Positions 1 to 6,335 of a stretch of 6,335 nucleotides of DNA are shown piece after piece (the stretch's first letter is position 1; every line of letters starts with the position of its first letter). This stretch comes from Vitrella brassicaformis CCMP3155. Its lineage: Eukaryota; Protista; Chromerida. Below the pieces are notes generated by a model. That model had not been told where the DNA came from. It did not search any database and saw only the letters and a program-made list of their open reading frames with translations. Position numbers and translations under genes: made by a program. Location of the stretch: the NCBI GenBank assembly GCA_001179505.1, contig CDMY01001009.1, forward strand, positions 1 through 6,335, written 5' to 3'.

Positions 1-635
1 CCTGCTGCTGCTCGCCCTGCTGCTGCTGGGCCTGCTGCTGGACCACCACCTCAGCGATCTCCGGCGCCTCATTGTCGACCTCAGGCCGCTCGTCGTCCTC
101 TGCAATCCATCAGTGGGCGTACACACAGAACAGACATCCGTTGACTTGACATGTGTGTGTCTTCATGCCCATGCGGTGAATACGTACCTGCCTCCAGCTC
201 GGCTCTGTCCTCATCAGGTCGCTGCTGCTCGTCTGAATCACCCAAGGCAACAATGGCAAGGCCTTTATCGTTACCCTCTCAGACATCAACGCACTCTTAC
301 CGTCGCCGTGGTAACCCAGGAACCATTCCGGGTGACTGTGCACGGGGTGGGCGTGTTGCGGGAGCTCTGCAATCCAGAAGTCTGCATCAATCGGTACACA
401 CAGCCCAACACACAAGGGTGTGTGTGTGCACAGTGATGCGTCGCCCTCACACACATACCCTCGTGGTCATCCGAGGCCTCCTCATCGATGCCCTCCCGCT
501 CGGTCCGCTCCACGGCTGCAGCACCACATACACAGTGAGCACGTCCATCTCTCAGGGTTTAGGCCACACTGATCGATTCCTCCTACCAGCGCGTTGCTCG
601 GCCTCTTTGACGAAACGGCACGCAACACATGCCAT
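1..635 (-). CDS. Left copy of unknown acidic/Gln-rich 'gene X' (3' exons only; runs off the left edge)
   Basis: Exons 587-604 (or 587-635 from an in-frame ATG at 635), 459-515, 301-381, 188-232 and 1-99 are separated by GT-AG introns 516-586, 382-458, 233-300 and 100-187 with matching phases. Spliced: (MACVACRFVK)EAEQRAAVERTEREGIDEEASDDHEDFWIAELPQHAHPVHSHPEWFLGYHGDDEQQRPDEDRAELEAEDDERPEVDNEAPEIAEVVVQQQAQQQQGEQQQ. Exons align to the right copy with mostly synonymous changes. The 5' end is uncertain and I recognise no family. Confidence 0.65.
175..586 (-). repeat. Left arm of a long imperfect inverted repeat (partner 5931-6335)
   Basis: The reverse complement of 175-586 aligns to 5931-6335 over three exons and three complete introns. 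Position 175 pairs with 6335, so the repeat probably extends beyond the window. Confidence 0.97.
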
Positions 636-692
636 CCCGTGGAGCCACCTCATTTCTCTCTCTGTGTGTGTATTCCTCACCTCGGAGGATGG

Positions 693-2557
693 TCATTGCG
701 TGTGCGTTGGGGTCTTGACGGCCAGCTCCACAGCATGATCCTTGGCAGCAGACTCAACAACCGTACCCACAAACCTGCGCATTACACCACACCACATCAC
801 ATCACGTCACCAACGTCGACCACTGACACATTCCCCCCTCTCTCCGTGTGGGTACCTGAAGCTGCACCCAGCGCCGCATTTGAGTAGCTTGTCGTATCCC
901 TCGACGGCCTTGTCGACGATGACCTGCAGGCTCTTGAGGCACGAGCCGTCGTTGAGTTCGACGAGGCAGAAGGCGCCGCCGCCCTGCTTGCGGATGGTGC
1001 GGCTCCACCCACACACCGTGATGAGCTTCCCAACCCAGGACGCACCCATGTCCTCAGACGCAACCAGCACACTCACGCGCACTCGGCCACCGAAGCTGCA
1101 GCCGCCATAGATGCATCCGATGCATTCACACAGCACAGCACCCGACGCAATCGACTCACTGCACCCCGTCGCCTTGCCCTTGCGTCTGTCTGTATTCACC
1201 TGAACGTGGCTTGTGGAACCTTGTTGTTCGTGTCCTGTATGGTCGATCCAGTGCCGTTGGTCAGGAGGGTGCCGTTGGCCATCCCGATCCCGCCTCCGCC
1301 ACTAGCAGCAGCAGCGGCAGCAGCAGCGGCAGCAGCAGGAGCACCAGTGACGGAAGCCGCTGCTGCTGCTGCCGATGGCTTGGCCGACGGCTGGCTTGTT
1401 TGCGCAGGGGTCGCTGCAACAGCGGCGGCAGGTGCGGCAGGTGCTGGCTCGTCATCGAACTGACACATGGTAAGACAATCTGCTGGTGAGAGGGGCAGAG
1501 TGTGGCGTTGATTCGATTCCCTACCTGTGGTGCCCAGTGCAATATGGTGTTGAACCAGCGGAACACACAGGGGTAGTCCTTCCGCCGCTCGGCCTCAAGG
1601 TACTGACAACAAACAAGAGAAAGAAAGAGAGAGAGAGGTGAGAAGCCATTCATCCATCCATTCATCCATCCATCCAATGGTGGTCCAGTCTTTGCGTCAG
1701 TCGAGTCAGGTACCTACCTTGAAGAGCTCGTATGCGGAGAAGGACAGCGAGATGTCCGCTATGGTGAGGGTGTAGCCCACAAGAAACGTCCGCGGGCGCA
1801 TGTGCTCGTTCAAATTCTCTAAATGAGTCACAGCAGCACACCCCATTGCACAAACCAAATGCTCTCACCCATGGGTGGTCGGCCGCTCACCCAGCAGTTT
1901 CTTGACCTCGTCTGAGGCCGCCAGGCGCCTCAGGACGGCCTGCCCTCGCGCACTCTCGCTCTGTGACGGCTGCTTCTTGGCCTGCTCGACGTAGTAGGTG
2001 CGGAGGAGGTAGTCGACGTGCTTGTCGGTCCAGTCCAGCCACTGGTCCACCTCAGCCTGCAACACCCACCACCATGGACAGCTTCTCGTGTGTGTGTGTG
2101 TGTGGTTACCGTGTTAGCGAAGGTCTCGCCATAGAGCAGCTTGCTGGGCATCACACTAGCAACTGACAGCAAGCAGCTCATGGCAATCCCGAATGCAGAC
2201 AACAGCGATGTCGTCATCCCACCGCCCACCCACTCACCGTATCTGAGGATGCTGTTGACGTACGACAGCTCGTAACCATCAGGCAGCTTCAGCTTCGGGA
2301 TCTGTGTCACGATAGACGAAGCAACCCTCCTCAGCTACACTGGTCGTGTCACAACAACACACATGACCGTACCTCGAAGCCGCCGGTGGACTGAGTCAGT
2401 GACGAGGCGGCCGGCCCCGCCGGTGGCTCCACCTCCACTGCGAGACCGACATAACGCGCCGCTGACAGGATCTTGCGGGCGGCCAGACTGCCCGCACTGG
2501 CTCGAAGCTTCTGAAGCAAGCAACCATACATAGGAGGAGGGGGTGACCTACTGACAT
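693..2557 (-). CDS. asnS: Truncated asparaginyl-tRNA synthetase: GST-like domain + Ala-rich linker + anticodon-binding OB fold, no catalytic domain (possible pseudogene); 395 aa as assembled
   Basis: Ten phase-consistent exons: 2552-2557, 2373-2510, 2238-2301, 2110-2162, 1891-2056, 1718-1818, 1525-1602, 1200-1459, 856-1095 and 693-774; all introns are GT-AG. The C-terminal part GRVRV...ITVCGWSRTIRKQGGGAFCLVELNDGSCLKSLQVIVDK...KCGAGCSFRFVGTVVES...AVELAVK matches the AsnRS N-terminal OB fold as I recall it (GWxRTxR, LNDGS, GCS motifs). An in-frame TGA lies at 693-695. The 6-nt first coding exon (ATG TCA) and 41-nt first intron are the least certain parts. Confidence 0.85.
856..1095 (-). other. 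Exon encoding most of the AsnRS anticodon-binding OB fold
   Basis: 240-nt exon flanked by CAG and GTACC; reads FGGRVRVSVLVASEDMGASWVGKLITVCGWSRTIRKQGGGAFCLVELNDGSCLKSLQVIVDKAVEGYDKLLKCGAGCSF. Confidence 0.9.
1304..1372 (-). repeat. GCT/GCC trinucleotide runs encoding the poly-Ala linker
   Basis: The + strand shows (gca/gcg) and (gct) runs; the - strand exon 1200-1459 reads AAAAAASVTGAPAAAAAAAAAAASGGGG. Confidence 0.9.
1525..2510 (-). other. GST-like domain of the EF1Bgamma / aminoacyl-tRNA synthetase-associated type
   Basis: Spliced motifs IPKLKLPDGYELSYVNSILRYVA, LYGETFANTAEVDQWLDW, LENLNEHMRPRTFLVGYTLTIADI and YPCVFRWFNTILHWAPQF follow the GST_N/GST_C pattern of eEF1Bgamma-like domains. 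Recognised from motif knowledge only. Confidence 0.85.
1648..1675. repeat. Intronic (CATC)n/(TGGA)n tetranucleotide microsatellite
   Basis: attcatccatccattcatccatccatcc inside intron 1603-1717, next to a GA-rich run at about 1615-1637. Confidence 0.85.
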
Positions 2558-2987
2558 GGATGTCTGGGAATGCTTGGGTCCCCGGTGTCTGCTGCTTACA
2601 CCCACCATTCTCGCGTGTGCTCTAAGCAGTCAAACTCTCCTACTCATGGACAGCCTTCGGTTTCGTCCAGAATTCGCGTTTCCGTTCCCTCCTCGTGCGA
2701 GCTAAGCTTGCAGCTCATTCTCAGCTCGCACGGGGCCATCGACCGCTTACCAGCGGTTATCGTCAAGGTTCACGTTCCCGACCTCTTCCAAGTCTCGTGG
2801 CATCTTTCCCCTTCATTTCCCCTTTTTGATTCGTTCCCTCATCAGTCAGCATTCCAGCATCCCTTCCCTCCCCCACCCAGCCCCACTTCATCAGCCGAGC
2901 ACCTGCACCCCCCCTCCCCCCGCCCCCCCTTCTCTCAGCAGCACCACCCAGTGCAATTGCTGTAGTTCATCTATCCCACCGTCGACA
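2558..2987. promoter_or_regulatory. Divergent (head-to-head) intergenic region, probable bidirectional promoter plus both 5' UTRs
   Basis: 430 bp between the - strand ATG at 2557 and the + strand ATG at 2988; pyrimidine/C-rich on the + strand. Promoter function is inferred from position; no specific element was identified. Confidence 0.55.
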
Positions 2988-4844
2988 ATGGTTCGCTACG
3001 GTCAGTATGACATGCCTCCGGTGGATCAGGAGGTGAACTTCAAGGTCGGCCAGCCGTCACCCGACACTCTGCTGCCGCTCGACCTCGTGCGGCAGGCCGC
3101 CAACGCCAAGTTCGCAGAAACCGACCACAAATTTCTTCAGTACGGCGACATCCAAGGCTACCTGGAGTTCAGGAAGTCACTCGCGGGATTCCTTACCGAG
3201 GTGCGTCTTTGCTTTGTGTGTCTGAGGGGCTGATATATTATATGGAGGGCACTGTGTGTCGTGTCGTGTGGTTTGCTTGTGTGTGTGTTTCGTGTGTTCA
3301 GCAATACGGTGCGCCAGTGAGCCCGGATGAGTTGATGGTCACTAATGGCATAACCGGAGGGCTGGCGCTCTTTATCACGTAAGATGAAGACAGGCAGGGC
3401 TACGGGCACTGCACTCAGCCGCATCGTGTGTTGTCTGTCTGCTTTCGATTGCATTCAGCATCTTCTGTCGGTCTGGCGATTTGGTGTTTGCCGAGGAGCC
3501 GTCCTACTTCCTGGCGCTCCGCATCTTTGAGGACTTCAAACTTAACGTCGTGCAGATTCCCATGGACGAGGTAACTAACTAGTGGGTGCCACAGACACAC
3601 ACACAGGGGGAGAGAGGTATGTGAATGGCCGGCCCACTCAGATATCTGTGTGTGCGTGTGTGTGTCAGGACGGCATCATTCCCGAGGAGTTGGAGAAGCA
3701 GCTGCAGAAGCAGGTGCCCAAGTTCCTATACACCATCCCCATCGGCCACAACCCTACCGGCAGGACACTCGCCGAAGACCGACGCAAGAAAATCGTCGAG
3801 CTCGCCTACAAATACAGCTTCGTCATGTGCGCAGACGAGGTCTACCACCTGCTCGGATTCTCAGGTACACACACATAGCCAATCAATGACTACGGAAACA
3901 TGGATTCCTCCGTTCACTTGGTGAGCGCAGGTGTGCCGATTCCGTTGCCGATGCCGTACTACGACCAGAAGAAGGAGCGTGTGGTGTCATTGAGGTCGTT
4001 TTCGAAGATCCTGGCGCCCGCCCTGCGGCTGGGGTGGATGCAGGGGCCCATGAAGATACTCAAACCCATCATCGACTGCGGACAGCTTGACTCCAGCGGG
4101 GTCAGTGAGTGGCCGACAAACACAAACACATGTGTGTGTCTTGACTGCCCATCCACCATCTGTGTGTGCCGTGTGTGCGTCAGGGCATCAATCCGGTGAT
4201 CAGCGGCATCGTGCACCAGGCGATCGACCTGGGTCTGCAGAAGAAGCACCTGGCCTATGTGCAGGAAGAGCTGCACAGGAGGTGTAACACACTCATGGTG
4301 TGTAAGGACGCACACACCGACGGCTGACATGACCACCGCCGCATTGACTGTGTTGTGTTGTGTTGTGTTGTGTGTGTAGTCTGCATTGGACAAGTACATG
4401 CCAGCTGGCGTGACGCACGAGGTGCCCAAGGGCGGATACTTCGTCCTTGTCAAACTGCCTGAGGTATTTCTTGTATTGGATTCGCACACACGCTGAGAAG
4501 AGGGCGAACTCACCATCGCATGGGTGCGTGCATGTCTTGCCCTGCTGTGGTGCTGCCTGTGTGCAGGGTATGGTATGCTGTCGACGGACCTGCTGGATGT
4601 TGCCGTCAAGAACAAGGCGCGATTCCTCCCGGGCACCTCGTTCGGACAGGTATGCACACACACACACACCCTGCCACTTTGTATTTGTGTGTGTCATTTG
4701 TGTGTGGCGTGTCATGTGTGGGTGCAGGGCTTCGGTTCGTATCTGCGGTTGAGTTTCTCCTACTACAGCGCCGAGGACATCGAGGTGGGCGTCAAGCGGC
4801 TGGCGGAGGCCATCACACAGCTGCAAATTTCACCACCAGTGTGA
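2988..4844 (+). CDS. PLP-dependent aminotransferase, class I/II (2-aminoadipate/aromatic aminotransferase-like), about 386 aa after repair; frameshifted as assembled
   Basis: Exons 2988-3200, 3302-3378, 3459-3570, 3669-3864, 3931-4100, 4184-4297, 4380-4463, 4567-4649 and 4728-4844. Motifs: LQYGDIQGY, VTNGITGGL, EEPSYFLA, HNPTG, ADEVY, SFSKILAPALRLGW (PLP Lys at 4005-4007), PKGGYF, FLPG and YLRLSF. All phases agree except exon 4567-4649, which carries a duplicated GGTAT. Substrate specificity cannot be determined from the sequence. Confidence 0.92.
4350..4369 (+). repeat. (GTGTT)4 pentanucleotide microsatellite upstream of a splice acceptor
   Basis: gtgttgtgttgtgttgtgtt directly before gtgtgtgtag in intron 4298-4379. 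Confidence 0.85.
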
Positions 4845-4929
4845 GTCTCTTTGTCTGACATACCCACGCACAACAGAACTCGGGCCGCAGTTCATCCCCT
4901 CAGCCGATGGAATGTGTGTGTTCGTTCAG
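4841..4929 (+). other. Candidate 89-nt intron linking the aminotransferase last exon to gene X
   Basis: GTGAGT donor overlaps the stop codon; CA-rich 5' part; tgtgtgtgttcgttcag acceptor; length matches local introns; the junction GT|C GAC ATG is in frame. Confidence 0.65.
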
Positions 4930-4933
4930 CGAC

Positions 4934-6335
4934 ATGGAGCCACAGGAGCAGGAGCAGCAGCAGCACCAACAGCAACAGCAGCAGCAGGGGGCTCACCACC
5001 ATGACCAGGGAGGGAGCACTCGTGAGCGTCGGACACGCACACGCACAGCCCCACTCCCATTCCTTCACTGTATCCCCCTCTTGTCCGTCAGGCCCCTCCA
5101 TCGCCCGATCCATGTTCGACCACTTCGCCAACCTGTGCTGCCCCACGGCCCGGGCCAAGGAGGGGGGGCCGGCGTTCTACGACGTGAATGGTCAGCAGCC
5201 ATTAATGAATGGCATCCGCGCACATAGCAAGCATGAATGTCCTGTGGGATTGTCTGTTGGTTGCAGTCCGCGAGGAGCATCTCCGGGGTATGAGCAGCAC
5301 ACGGCTATACGAGTTAATGTGCCACGGTTGCTGTCCCTGCTCTGTTGTGTGCAGGCCGGGGCAGCAGCACCGCCACACCCGCCAACACCAACCACGACAC
5401 CAACAAAGACACCAACAAGCCAGCGCTGGTTCGGGAACAAAAGAAGTCTGACACAAGTCAGGTACCCATTGCTGCTGTCTGCGTGTGTTGTCGTCTGTGT
5501 GTGCAGGGGGCGATGGGGACAATGTCCACCAGGGTACGTGAGTCAGAATGCCAAGAAGGCAGCCAAACACGCCGACCATCGTGCCGTTGTCTCCCATGTG
5601 TGCAGGAGTCCCTCCCCGCGTCACCAACGGCCAAGGCCAAGCCCAAGGTATCCACACTCGAGAGAATCAGCAGTGTCGTGACGCACACAACCACACACAC
5701 ACACATTGCCCTTTTGTGGCCTGTGTGTGTGCGGTTGGTTGGGTGCAGCAGCCTGCCTTCCACGCCCAGCCAGCCGAGCAGCAGGAGGACGACCAAGAGG
5801 ACGACCACAGCCAGCCAGAAGGTACTACGTTGATATCTATAGAGATACGCGTACATCTGTCGTATGTGTCTGTTATGCCCTTTGTGTGCAGCAGGAGGGC
5901 AAGACGACGCGACGGCCGCGCAGAGGGCGGGTAGGAGGAATCAATCAGTGATCGTCGCACGGCAGAGATGGACGTGCTCACTGTGTCTGTGCCGCTGCAG
6001 CCGTGGAGCGGACCGAGCGGGAGGGCATCGACGAGGAGGCCTCGGATGACCACGAGGGTATGTGTGGGGGCGACACATCACTATGCACACACACACCCTT
6101 GTGTGTTGGGCTGTGCGTATCGATGCAGACTTCTGGATTGCGGAGCTCCCGCAACACGCCCACCCCGTGCACAGCCACCCGGAATGGTTCCTGGGTTACC
6201 ACGGCGACGGTAAGAGTGCGTTGATGTCTGAGAGGGTAAGGATAAAGGCCTTGCCATTGTTGCCTTGGGTGATTCAGACGAGCAGCAGCGACCTGATGAG
6301 GACAGAGCCGAGCTGGCGGCAGGTACGTATTCACC
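4934..6335 (+). CDS. Right copy of unknown low-complexity acidic/Gln-rich 'gene X' (partial; runs off the right edge)
   Basis: Eleven phase-consistent exons with no stop: 4934-5021, 5092-5190, 5267-5287, 5355-5461, 5507-5533, 5606-5647, 5749-5821, 5892-5930, 6001-6057, 6129-6209 and 6278-6322. Spliced: MEPQEQEQQQHQQQQQQQGAHHHDQGGSTRPSIARSMFDHFANLCCPTARAKEGGPAFYDVNVREEHLRGRGSSTATPANTNHDTNKDTNKPALVREQKKSDTSQGAMGTMSTRESLPASPTAKAKPKQPAFHAQPAEQQEDDQEDDHSQPEAGGQDDATAAQRAAVERTEREGIDEEASDDHEDFWIAELPQHAHPVHSHPEWFLGYHGDDEQQRPDEDRAELAA. No family recognised. Confidence 0.75.
4943..4987 (+). repeat. CAG-rich tract encoding poly-Gln
   Basis: caggagcaggagcagcagcagcaccaacagcaacagcagcagcag reads QEQEQQQHQQQQQQQ. 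Confidence 0.85.
5931..6335 (+). repeat. Right arm of the long imperfect inverted repeat (partner 175-586)
   Basis: Aligns to the reverse complement of 175-586 from the GTAGGAGGAATC donor to the window end. Confidence 0.97.

What the first reader, a model, noticed from the sequence alone, without database searches (positions are those of the whole stretch)
1..6335. Symmetric locus: two divergently transcribed enzyme genes each run in frame into a copy of the same unknown acidic tail
Seen: layout is geneX'(-) <- AsnRS fragment(-) | aminotransferase(+) -> geneX(+). On both sides a candidate intron (605-680 and 4841-4929) joins the enzyme exons to gene X exons in the correct phase. On both sides a single small indel upstream of the junction (713/714 and 4567-4576) blocks translation into the tail. 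Inference: gene X may be a repeated module that acquires host gene 5' ends and promoters, or the locus may be an inverted duplication that created chimeric genes later silenced by frameshift. Each in-frame junction has about a 1-in-3 chance of arising by accident, so the symmetry is suggestive rather than proof.
Basis: partly seen in the sequence, partly recalled or inferred. Interest (0 to 1): 0.85.

Follow-up and report, generated by a model that had tools for sequence, protein, structure and literature searches.

The report
Mosaic of copied gene pieces
This small contig of the alga Vitrella brassicaformis is a patchwork in which incomplete copies of two housekeeping enzyme genes sit back to back, each next to a member of a repeated gene family for acidic, unstructured proteins; it shows how new fused genes can be assembled, but here neither fusion can be translated as the sequence stands, and no RNA from either enzyme copy was seen.

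Summary
The layout is real, but it is not two native enzyme genes with tails. The window is the whole 6,335-nt contig CDMY01001009.1 of Vitrella brassicaformis CCMP3155.

- **Aminotransferase:** it is a partial copy that keeps its introns (2964-4827, 90.7% identical). The intact, expressed gene lies on another contig, where neither AsnRS nor gene X is its neighbour.
- **AsnRS piece:** it has a GST-like domain and an OB fold but no catalytic domain. A second, expressed version shows up in reads, so it is probably also a partial copy.
- **Gene X:** it belongs to a multi-copy family of acidic, disordered proteins with no known relatives. At least six modules lie on another contig.
- **Right junction:** a canonical 89-nt intron would join the cut aminotransferase in frame to gene X. 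Gene X also has its own ATG 4 nt inside that exon. A window-only 5-bp duplication shifts the frame, and no RNA shows the joint.
- **Left junction:** the proposed intron contains a coding exon conserved in the family, with its own ATG, so that junction is not supported.
- **Selection:** dN/dS of 0.11 and indel-free exons show the aminotransferase copy stayed coding for most of its history.
- **Third case:** a 5' fragment of another gene lies upstream of family exons on the other contig.

Other first-stage notes on this genome report similar mosaics; these are unchecked.

The parts
1..99 (-). Gene X' exon X12' (acidic and Gln-rich); runs off the contig end
   Evidence: Preceded by an AG acceptor; the ORF continues from X11'. 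An RNA contig of a close paralogue joins 188 to 99.
188..232 (-). Gene X' exon X11'
   Evidence: GT..AG borders, codon phase 1 to 1; 96% identical to the right copy.
301..381 (-). Gene X' exon X10' carrying the family motif (AHPVHSHPEWFLGYHGD)
   Evidence: The motif recurs three times in P0001 and in other L001 copies.
459..515 (-). Gene X' exon X9'
   Evidence: conserved in all five family copies aligned.
587..653 (-). Gene X' first coding exon of the 'LHGMACVACRFV' type, with in-frame ATGs at 653-651 and 635-633.
   Evidence: Near-identical DNA and peptide in the P0001 gene (L001 about 11470-11540), and in frame with X9'.
654..680 (-). 27-nt remnant of AsnRS intron 9 (the GTGAGG donor at 680). 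The breakpoint between AsnRS-derived and family-derived DNA lies here.
   Evidence: Homology to the family stops at about 655. Independent read contigs cover 499-879 with no mismatch.
681..2608 (-). 3'-truncated AsnRS-like gene piece: GST-like / Arc1p_N domain, Ala-rich linker and class IIb OB fold. It has no catalytic domain, and a stop TGA lies at 695-693.
   Evidence: Annotated as 693-2608, 394 aa. Pfam Arc1p_N_like / GST_C and tRNA_anti-codon; best NCBIfam hit asnS; exon model. A second version at about half depth in DNA is the only one seen in RNA.
2609..2963 (.). C/T-rich spacer of unknown origin between the two head-to-head pieces; a candidate shared promoter (inferred)
   Evidence: No match to the parent locus or to L001. 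A read contig covers 2381-3042 without mismatch.
2964..4827 (+). Partial, intron-retaining copy of the class I/II aminotransferase gene. It runs from 24 nt before the ATG to 7 codons before the parent's stop. Exons: 2988-3200, 3302-3378, 3459-3570, 3669-3864, 3931-4100, 4184-4297, 4380-4463, 4567-4649, 4728-4827.
   Evidence: 90.65% identical to CDMY01000228.1 (L083 9977-11846). The parent is P0125, 388 aa. dN/dS 0.113; exon versus intron divergence.
4567..4576 (+). 5-bp tandem duplication (GGTAT GGTAT) at the start of exon 8; a frameshift found only in this copy
   Evidence: Absent from the parent DNA and from RNA, which joins 4463 to 4572. It leads to a premature stop in exon 9.
4828..4929 (+). 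13 nt of foreign sequence completing the cut exon (giving ISPPV and stop TGA at 4842-4844), then the candidate 89-nt intron 4841-4929
   Evidence: Homology to the parent ends at 4827/4828. GTGAGT...CAG ends, and in frame with gene X exon 1. No RNA joint was seen.
4930..6322 (+). Gene X: 11 exons in one ORF from its own ATG at 4934 (4930-5021, 5092-5190, 5267-5287, 5355-5461, 5507-5533, 5606-5647, 5749-5821, 5892-5930, 6001-6057, 6129-6209, 6278-6322). It runs off the contig and is not annotated.
   Evidence: All borders are GT..AG and there is no stop. X4-X12 have close paralogues (depth and an RNA contig). X6-X12-like exons lie in the 513-aa gene of L001. The stretch 5149-5346 is at single-copy depth.

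Best explanation
The contig is a patchwork made by DNA-level partial duplication in a region occupied by a repeated gene family. Two unrelated housekeeping genes each contributed an incomplete copy: a GST-domain asparaginyl-tRNA synthetase and a class I/II PLP aminotransferase. Each copy keeps its introns and has lost its 3' end; the aminotransferase copy, and probably the AsnRS copy, also lacks its own promoter. The two copies lie head to head around a 355-nt spacer. Each abuts, in the same orientation, a member of a lineage-specific family ('gene X') that encodes acidic, disordered proteins with a short HSHPxWFLGY motif and is built mostly of exons whose length is a multiple of three.

Shown:
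- The aminotransferase parent is intact and expressed elsewhere, with different neighbours.
- The breakpoints are at 2964 and 4827/4828, and on the left within 654-680.
- The family is multi-copy.
- All junctions stand in read contigs at single-copy depth.
- The aminotransferase copy evolved under protein-level constraint for most of its history. It now carries a frameshift and changes at conserved residues.

Inferred:
- The right junction once allowed, or still allows in some strains, either a stand-alone enzyme ending in ISPPV or a spliced enzyme-gene X fusion.
- The left junction never gave a fusion. X' is translated, if at all, from its own ATG.
- Both enzyme copies are now silent or nearly so.
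For: - The window equals contig CDMY01001009.1. Its annotation has only the two enzyme pieces.
- The parent P0125 lies on a 160-kb contig between an unknown 946-aa gene and TMEM107.
- Window 2964-4827 matches the parent at 90.65% with introns retained. The edges of the match are shown.
- RNA contigs L084 and L085 are about 100% identical to the parent, not to the copy.
- At every variant site the RNA shows only the 'other' version, while DNA shows both at about 1:1.
- Read contigs 499-879, 2381-3042 and 4798-5482 cross the junctions with no mismatch, at depth 17-23, which is about single-copy.
- Family evidence: P0001 has three motif copies; L001 holds at least six modules; a 513-aa stand-alone member has X6-X12-like exons.
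- The left exon is conserved in the family.
- Selection: dS 0.112 and dN 0.0127. Introns are 88.1% identical with 16 indels, against one indel in 1144 nt of exons. A binomial test against immediate pseudogenisation gives P about 6e-6.
- Decay: G221R beside the PLP-lysine motif, P56Q and I187M at conserved sites, plus the 5-bp duplication.
Against: - No RNA data from the copy itself were available, and contigs drop rare variants, so low-level or stage-specific expression is not excluded.
- The AsnRS parent was not retrieved. For that piece, 'partial copy' rests on read variants and on the missing catalytic domain.
- The 5-bp duplication was not verified in independent reads.
- The contig ends inside the repeats, so the wider locus is unknown.
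- The low dN/dS sits oddly with a copy that lacks its own promoter. It implies that some promoter, perhaps the spacer, served it.
Confidence: 0.68

Rival explanations
1. The gene X family is a fusion-forming module or duplication hub. Its members repeatedly gain 5' pieces of host genes directly upstream, in the same orientation, by a recurrent mechanism such as template switching during replication or repair in the repeat array. This produces chimeric genes. It is the first reader's idea, without promoter capture.
For: - There are three independent cases in the 30 kb of family-bearing DNA examined: aminotransferase to X, AsnRS-N to X' (this window), and a 374-nt intron-retaining copy of the first 2.5 exons of a COP9-signalosome-like gene, 240 nt upstream of a family exon.
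- Two of the host pieces start at or just before their ATG.
- The family's exons are mostly a multiple of three in length, which suits shuffling.
- An ordinary 22-kb locus (L083) has no such fragment copies.
- Other first-stage notes on this genome report similar mosaics (unchecked).
Against: - The sample is tiny and was not chosen at random.
- Three other family members (P0001, the 513-aa gene, the 198-aa gene) are annotated without recognisable host pieces.
- No fusion transcript was seen.
- Same orientation three times has a chance of 1 in 8.
- Only one of the two junctions in the window is in frame. The frame of the COP9 case was not worked out.
Confidence: 0.2
2. Transposon-mediated gene capture of the Pack-MULE, CACTA or Helitron type. 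The inverted gene X arms would be the ends of a mobile element, and the enzyme pieces its cargo.
For: - Inverted arms flank intron-retaining fragments that come from at least two donor loci.
- This is the hallmark layout of Pack-type elements, from knowledge of those elements in plants.
Against: - The arms are spliced coding exons of an expressed protein family.
- Elsewhere the family lies in direct, not inverted, arrays.
- The window holds no transposase.
- The arms run off the contig, so termini and target-site duplications cannot be seen.
- The inner ends of the arms differ in exon content.
Confidence: 0.07
3. Assembly artefact or uncollapsed haplotype: the contig does not exist as such in the genome.
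For: - It is a 6.3-kb orphan contig that ends in repeats.
- DNA runs show two versions of the enzyme exons at about equal depth.
Against: - Contigs built from raw reads of several runs cross each junction without mismatch, at single-copy depth.
- The flanks differ completely from the parent locus, so it is not an allele of it.
- The arms differ by 4-15%, unlike a fold-back artefact.
Confidence: 0.05

Closest known systems
Chimeric genes from partial (DNA-level) gene duplication and exon shuffling, for example the Drosophila and rice surveys of new chimeric genes (PMC2211543, PMC3673630; listed, abstracts only read)
   Same: A 3'-truncated, intron-retaining copy of a parent gene is joined to exons of another gene. 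The junction lies inside an exon. An in-frame splice is possible, and the recipient exons have matching phases.
   Different: Here no chimeric transcript is shown. The copy lacks the parent's promoter. Two different donors are arranged symmetrically beside inverted copies of one repeated family.
'Core duplicon' families of great-ape segmental duplications (NBPF, NPIP and others); comparison from my own knowledge
   Same: A fast-expanding, lineage-specific gene family lies at the centre or flank of mosaic duplication blocks. These blocks carry pieces of unrelated genes and can give fusion transcripts.
   Different: The scale differs: a few kilobases here against tens to hundreds of kilobases. 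The organism is a chromerid alga. No evidence yet shows that the association is genome-wide.
Pack-MULE / Helitron / CACTA capture of host gene fragments in plants (PMC1947982, PMC3288121, PMC13317346; listed, abstracts only read)
   Same: Intron-retaining fragments from several donor loci are placed side by side and flanked by repeated sequence.
   Different: No transposase, defined termini or target-site duplication were found. The flanking repeats are spliced protein-coding exons.
Catalytically inactive tRNA-synthetase-derived cofactors with GST-like and tRNA-binding OB domains (yeast Arc1p and AIMP-type proteins); from my own knowledge plus the Pfam Arc1p_N_like hit
   Same: The left piece encodes a GST-like / Arc1p_N domain plus an OB fold, without a catalytic core.
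   Different: The OB fold is of the AsnRS anticodon-binding type, not the Trbp111/EMAPII type. The piece looks like a recent truncated copy and is not seen in RNA.

Membership tests
Class I/II PLP-dependent aminotransferase (Pfam PF00155) | Full-length match to the family profile | tested here: met
   The parent P0125 matches PF00155 over 16-373 with E 1.6e-31. The copy's exons match piecewise. The copy is 97% identical in protein to the parent.
Class I/II PLP-dependent aminotransferase (Pfam PF00155) | Intact ORF with the PLP-lysine motif (SFSK) in its conserved context | tested here: not met
   The lysine motif is present, but the invariant Gly before it is Arg in the copy. A 5-bp duplication shifts the frame after exon 7.
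Asparaginyl-tRNA synthetase (class IIb) | N-terminal anticodon-binding OB fold | tested here: met
   PF01336, E 4e-5, below the gathering score. The best NCBIfam hits are asnS, E 1e-6, against aspS at 0.01. A PDB Asp/Asn-type OB domain matches at E 3e-4. This is a weak, partial match.
Asparaginyl-tRNA synthetase (class IIb) | Class II catalytic domain (motifs 1-3) | tested here: not met
   The coding sequence stops at 695-693, just after the OB fold. Downstream DNA is gene X family sequence.
Chimeric gene by partial DNA duplication | An intact parent elsewhere; the copy retains introns; the breakpoint lies inside the gene | tested here: met
   Shown for the aminotransferase. For AsnRS it is only indirect: a second version in reads.
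Chimeric gene by partial DNA duplication | A transcript joining donor and recipient exons | tested here: not met
   The table from two RNA runs lists neither a 4840-to-4930 nor a 681-to-604 joint, though 28 further joints were not shown. Only the parent versions are seen. Contigs can miss rare forms, and no other RNA was available.
Retrocopy (RNA-based duplication) | Loss of introns and a poly(A) remnant | tested here: not met
   All eight introns are retained. There is no A-tract at 4828.
Pack-type or Helitron gene-capturing transposon | Defined termini with target-site duplication (or 5'-TC...CTRR-3' ends), and a related autonomous element | not testable with these tools
   The arms run off both contig ends, and the genome could not be searched. 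The window has no transposase ORF.
Gene X family (HSHPxWFLGY acidic proteins; undescribed) | The motif exon plus flanking acidic exons, shared at DNA and protein level | tested here: met
   Window X10 against P0001: E 4e-16, with three motif copies. There is 78-82% DNA identity to several L001 modules. No Pfam family matches and the predicted structure is disordered.

The most novel reading that the evidence does not exclude
In Vitrella, the gene X family marks duplication hubs where 5' portions of transcribed host genes are repeatedly copied in upstream of family exons. These portions start at about the transcript start or ATG and still contain their introns. This would be a recurrent, possibly transcription-coupled, template-switching route to new chimeric genes, and some of them (like this aminotransferase copy) would be kept by selection for long periods.
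Probability: 0.15. Interest if true: 0.7.

Novelty: new member of a known kind. Interest (0 to 1): 0.42.

Why it matters
Partial gene duplication joined to other exons is a textbook route to new genes, but it is barely documented in chromerids, the free-living relatives of apicomplexan parasites. This contig gives a dated, dissected example.

- The donor of one piece is known, and its breakpoints are mapped to the base.
- That copy stayed under protein-level selection (dN/dS 0.11) despite losing its own promoter and last seven codons, and only recently began to decay.
- It also defines a previously undescribed, multi-copy family of acidic disordered proteins built of same-phase exons. Such copied pieces gather around this family in the few places examined.
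- If the association holds genome-wide, it would point to a specific mechanism of exon shuffling in this lineage.
- As it stands, the locus is an ordinary, if neat, mosaic duplicate. The database annotation (two truncated 'genes', with the gene X copies missed) should be read with that in mind.

Tried and rejected
1. Fusion transcripts. Two RNA runs were laid on 1-5913. They show only the parent aminotransferase and the 'other' AsnRS version, and the table lists no joint at either proposed junction (28 further joints were not shown). The runs come from DNA nearly identical to the assembly, so the earlier idea that they were 'related strains 3-5% apart' was dropped. The differences are between paralogues.

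2. The 520-555 extra bases on the aminotransferase RNA contigs were first suspected to be gene X. They are the parent's 3' UTR, overlapping TMEM107.

3. The upstream neighbour of the parent aminotransferase (946 aa) is not AsnRS; there is no DNA match. The head-to-head pairing is therefore secondary.

4. Family searches:
- The whole of P0001, and then its central region, found only P0001 itself. Low-complexity words swamp the search, so this says little.
- A motif-profile scan and an exon-pattern scan of JGI metagenome contigs found nothing.
- Hits P0002-P0004 of the representative search share only an 'HPEWF' word in unrelated repeat proteins and were set aside.

5. ESM Atlas and Pfam gave no relatives for the family.

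6. The AsnRS parent could not be fetched, because no search could take a spliced protein by reference.

7. Helitron or TIR termini were not examined, because the repeats run off the contig.

Full report
**What the window is**

The window is the complete 6,335-nt contig CDMY01001009.1 of Vitrella brassicaformis CCMP3155 (GCA_001179505.1). The fetched contig is identical to the window. The public annotation has two genes. One is 693-2608 (-), 394 aa, with GST_C / Arc1p_N_like domains. The other is 2988-4496 (+), 332 aa, an aminotransferase (P0014). Neither gene X copy is annotated. The genome is intron-rich, with short GT..AG introns of 66-108 nt.

**Checking the observation**

The inverted repeat is real. 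Positions 175-398 match 6112-6335 at 96%, and 410-552 match 5964-6106 at 85%. A last weak stretch reaches about 606 / 5910.

I rebuilt the genes exon by exon.
- **Aminotransferase:** nine exons. They give an intact 386-aa protein only if exon 8 starts at 4572. As the sequence stands, GGTAT GGTAT at 4567-4576 shifts the frame and a stop follows in exon 9.
- **Gene X:** eleven exons with perfect GT..AG borders and one open frame, starting from its own ATG at 4934. Eight of the eleven exons are a multiple of 3 nt long, and X8-X11 all start and end in codon phase 1.
- **Left gene:** a GST-like domain, an Ala-rich linker and a class IIb OB fold whose best family match is asnS. It ends at TGA 695-693, 12 nt before a GTGAGG donor.

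**The aminotransferase is a copy**

Protein P0014 shares its 90% cluster with P0125 (388 aa), which is encoded on the 160-kb contig CDMY01000228.1. There its neighbours are an unknown 946-aa gene and TMEM107. Neither AsnRS nor gene X is nearby.

Window 2964-4827 aligns to that locus at 90.65% with all introns present, and nothing else in the window matches it. Homology begins 24 nt before the ATG, which is inside the transcribed 5' UTR. It ends after '...ITQLQ', seven codons before the parent's stop. The 5-bp duplication is absent from the parent.

Two transcript contigs (L084, L085) are about 100% identical to the parent and encode exactly P0125. In the read layout, RNA shows only the 'other' base at every site where copy and parent differ. 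DNA runs show both versions at about equal depth. The joint '4463 to 4572, GT..AT' in RNA is simply the parent transcript, which lacks the duplication.

**The AsnRS piece**

DNA runs likewise carry a second version of its exons at about half the depth, and RNA contigs match only that version. Of the ten listed differences, six are synonymous.

Since the piece lacks the catalytic domain, I infer that it is a truncated copy of a full gene elsewhere. I could not fetch that gene, so the proposed 1-nt indel at 713/714 is untested.

**Gene X is a family, and the left 'intron' is coding**

A search with the motif exon found P0001 (459 aa, Vitrella), which carries the motif three times between acidic linkers. 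Its locus (L001, contig CDMY01000287.1) holds at least six related modules in direct orientation, at 70-95% identity to one another and 78-82% to the window. One of these is a 513-aa stand-alone gene with X6-X12-like exons.

P0001 has no Pfam family, and its predicted structure is disordered (pLDDT 0.34).

P0001 also contains '...LHGMACVACRFVTEAEMQA AVELAEREG...'. The same peptide and near-identical DNA lie at window 653-587 on the minus strand, starting with an ATG and in frame with X9'. Family homology ends at about 655, leaving 27 nt of AsnRS intron 9 (654-680). The left junction therefore gives no supported fusion, and X' has its own start codon.

**The junctions are real**

Contigs built from raw reads of separate DNA runs cover 499-879, 2381-3042 and 4798-5482 without a mismatch. 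Their depth is 17-23, the same as parent-specific segments. The arms have about four times that depth, so further close copies exist. One of them gives an RNA contig that joins X9 to X11 without laying X10. Positions 5149-5346 (X2-X3) are at single-copy depth and have no RNA coverage.

**History of the aminotransferase copy**

- Exons differ at 39 of 1144 sites, 28 synonymous and 11 not. This gives dS 0.112, dN 0.0127 and dN/dS 0.113.
- Introns are 88.1% identical with 16 indels, while the exons have a single indel, the 5-bp duplication.
- If the copy had drifted freely since its birth, about 64% of the differences should change the protein. Only 28% do (binomial P about 6e-6).
- The copy was therefore kept as a coding gene for most of its history.
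- Against 117 bacterial homologues, the copy has changed near-invariant residues: Gly to Arg directly before the PLP-lysine motif, Pro56 to Gln and Ile187 to Met.
- Together with the frameshift, this suggests recent decay, or a strain-specific or assembly fault for the frameshift, which I could not check.

**A third case**

In L001, a 374-nt copy of the first two and a half exons of a neighbouring COP9-signalosome-like gene lies 240 nt upstream of a family exon on the same strand. Its introns are included, and homology starts at about the ATG. An ordinary 22-kb locus (L083) has no such fragment copies. Three other family members are annotated without recognisable host pieces.

**Verdict**

The symmetric layout is real, but it reflects a mosaic of copied gene pieces beside inverted members of a repeated family, not two native enzymes with tails. 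One junction (right) could give an in-frame chimera and one (left) could not. Neither can be translated into the tail as the sequence stands, and no RNA from either enzyme copy was seen.

The kind of event is well known: partial duplication, exon shuffling and duplication hubs. The family and its setting in a chromerid are new. No paper in the library describes it.

Noticed in passing
L001:13642-14011 (source gene at L001:22106-22479): A 374-nt copy, 90% identical and keeping its introns, of the first 2.5 exons of a COP9-signalosome-like gene. Homology starts at about the ATG. It lies just after the P0001 gene and 240 nt before another gene X-family exon (14253-14357).
   Followed up: partly
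Skipping would keep the frame, because X10 is 81 nt and starts and ends in phase 1.
   Followed up: no
window 3933-4100 (exon 5), codon for parent residue 221: The aminotransferase copy has Arg where the parent and 116 of 117 homologues have Gly, directly before the SFSK PLP-lysine motif.
   Followed up: partly
L084:1-2103 (JGI transcript contig): One RNA contig carries the parent aminotransferase (+) and TMEM107 (-). The two convergent genes overlap in their 3' UTRs.
   Followed up: no
window 1646-1673 and L001:10277-10312: The same CCATTCATCCAT microsatellite lies in an AsnRS-piece intron and in the P0001 gene region (94% over 36 nt). This is probably just a common repeat.
   Followed up: no
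window 5092-5287 (exons X2, X3): These two predicted exons of gene X, both a multiple of 3 nt long, are at single-copy DNA depth and have no RNA coverage, unlike X4-X12. They have no match in L001. They may be a further inserted piece or not real exons.
   Followed up: no
L001:14013-14695 and 14996-15666; gaps at 14696-14995, 15673-15972, 18896-19195: There are 96%-identical tandem repeats and three 300-N gaps inside the family cluster. The assembly of this family is unreliable, and copy numbers are lower bounds.
   Followed up: no
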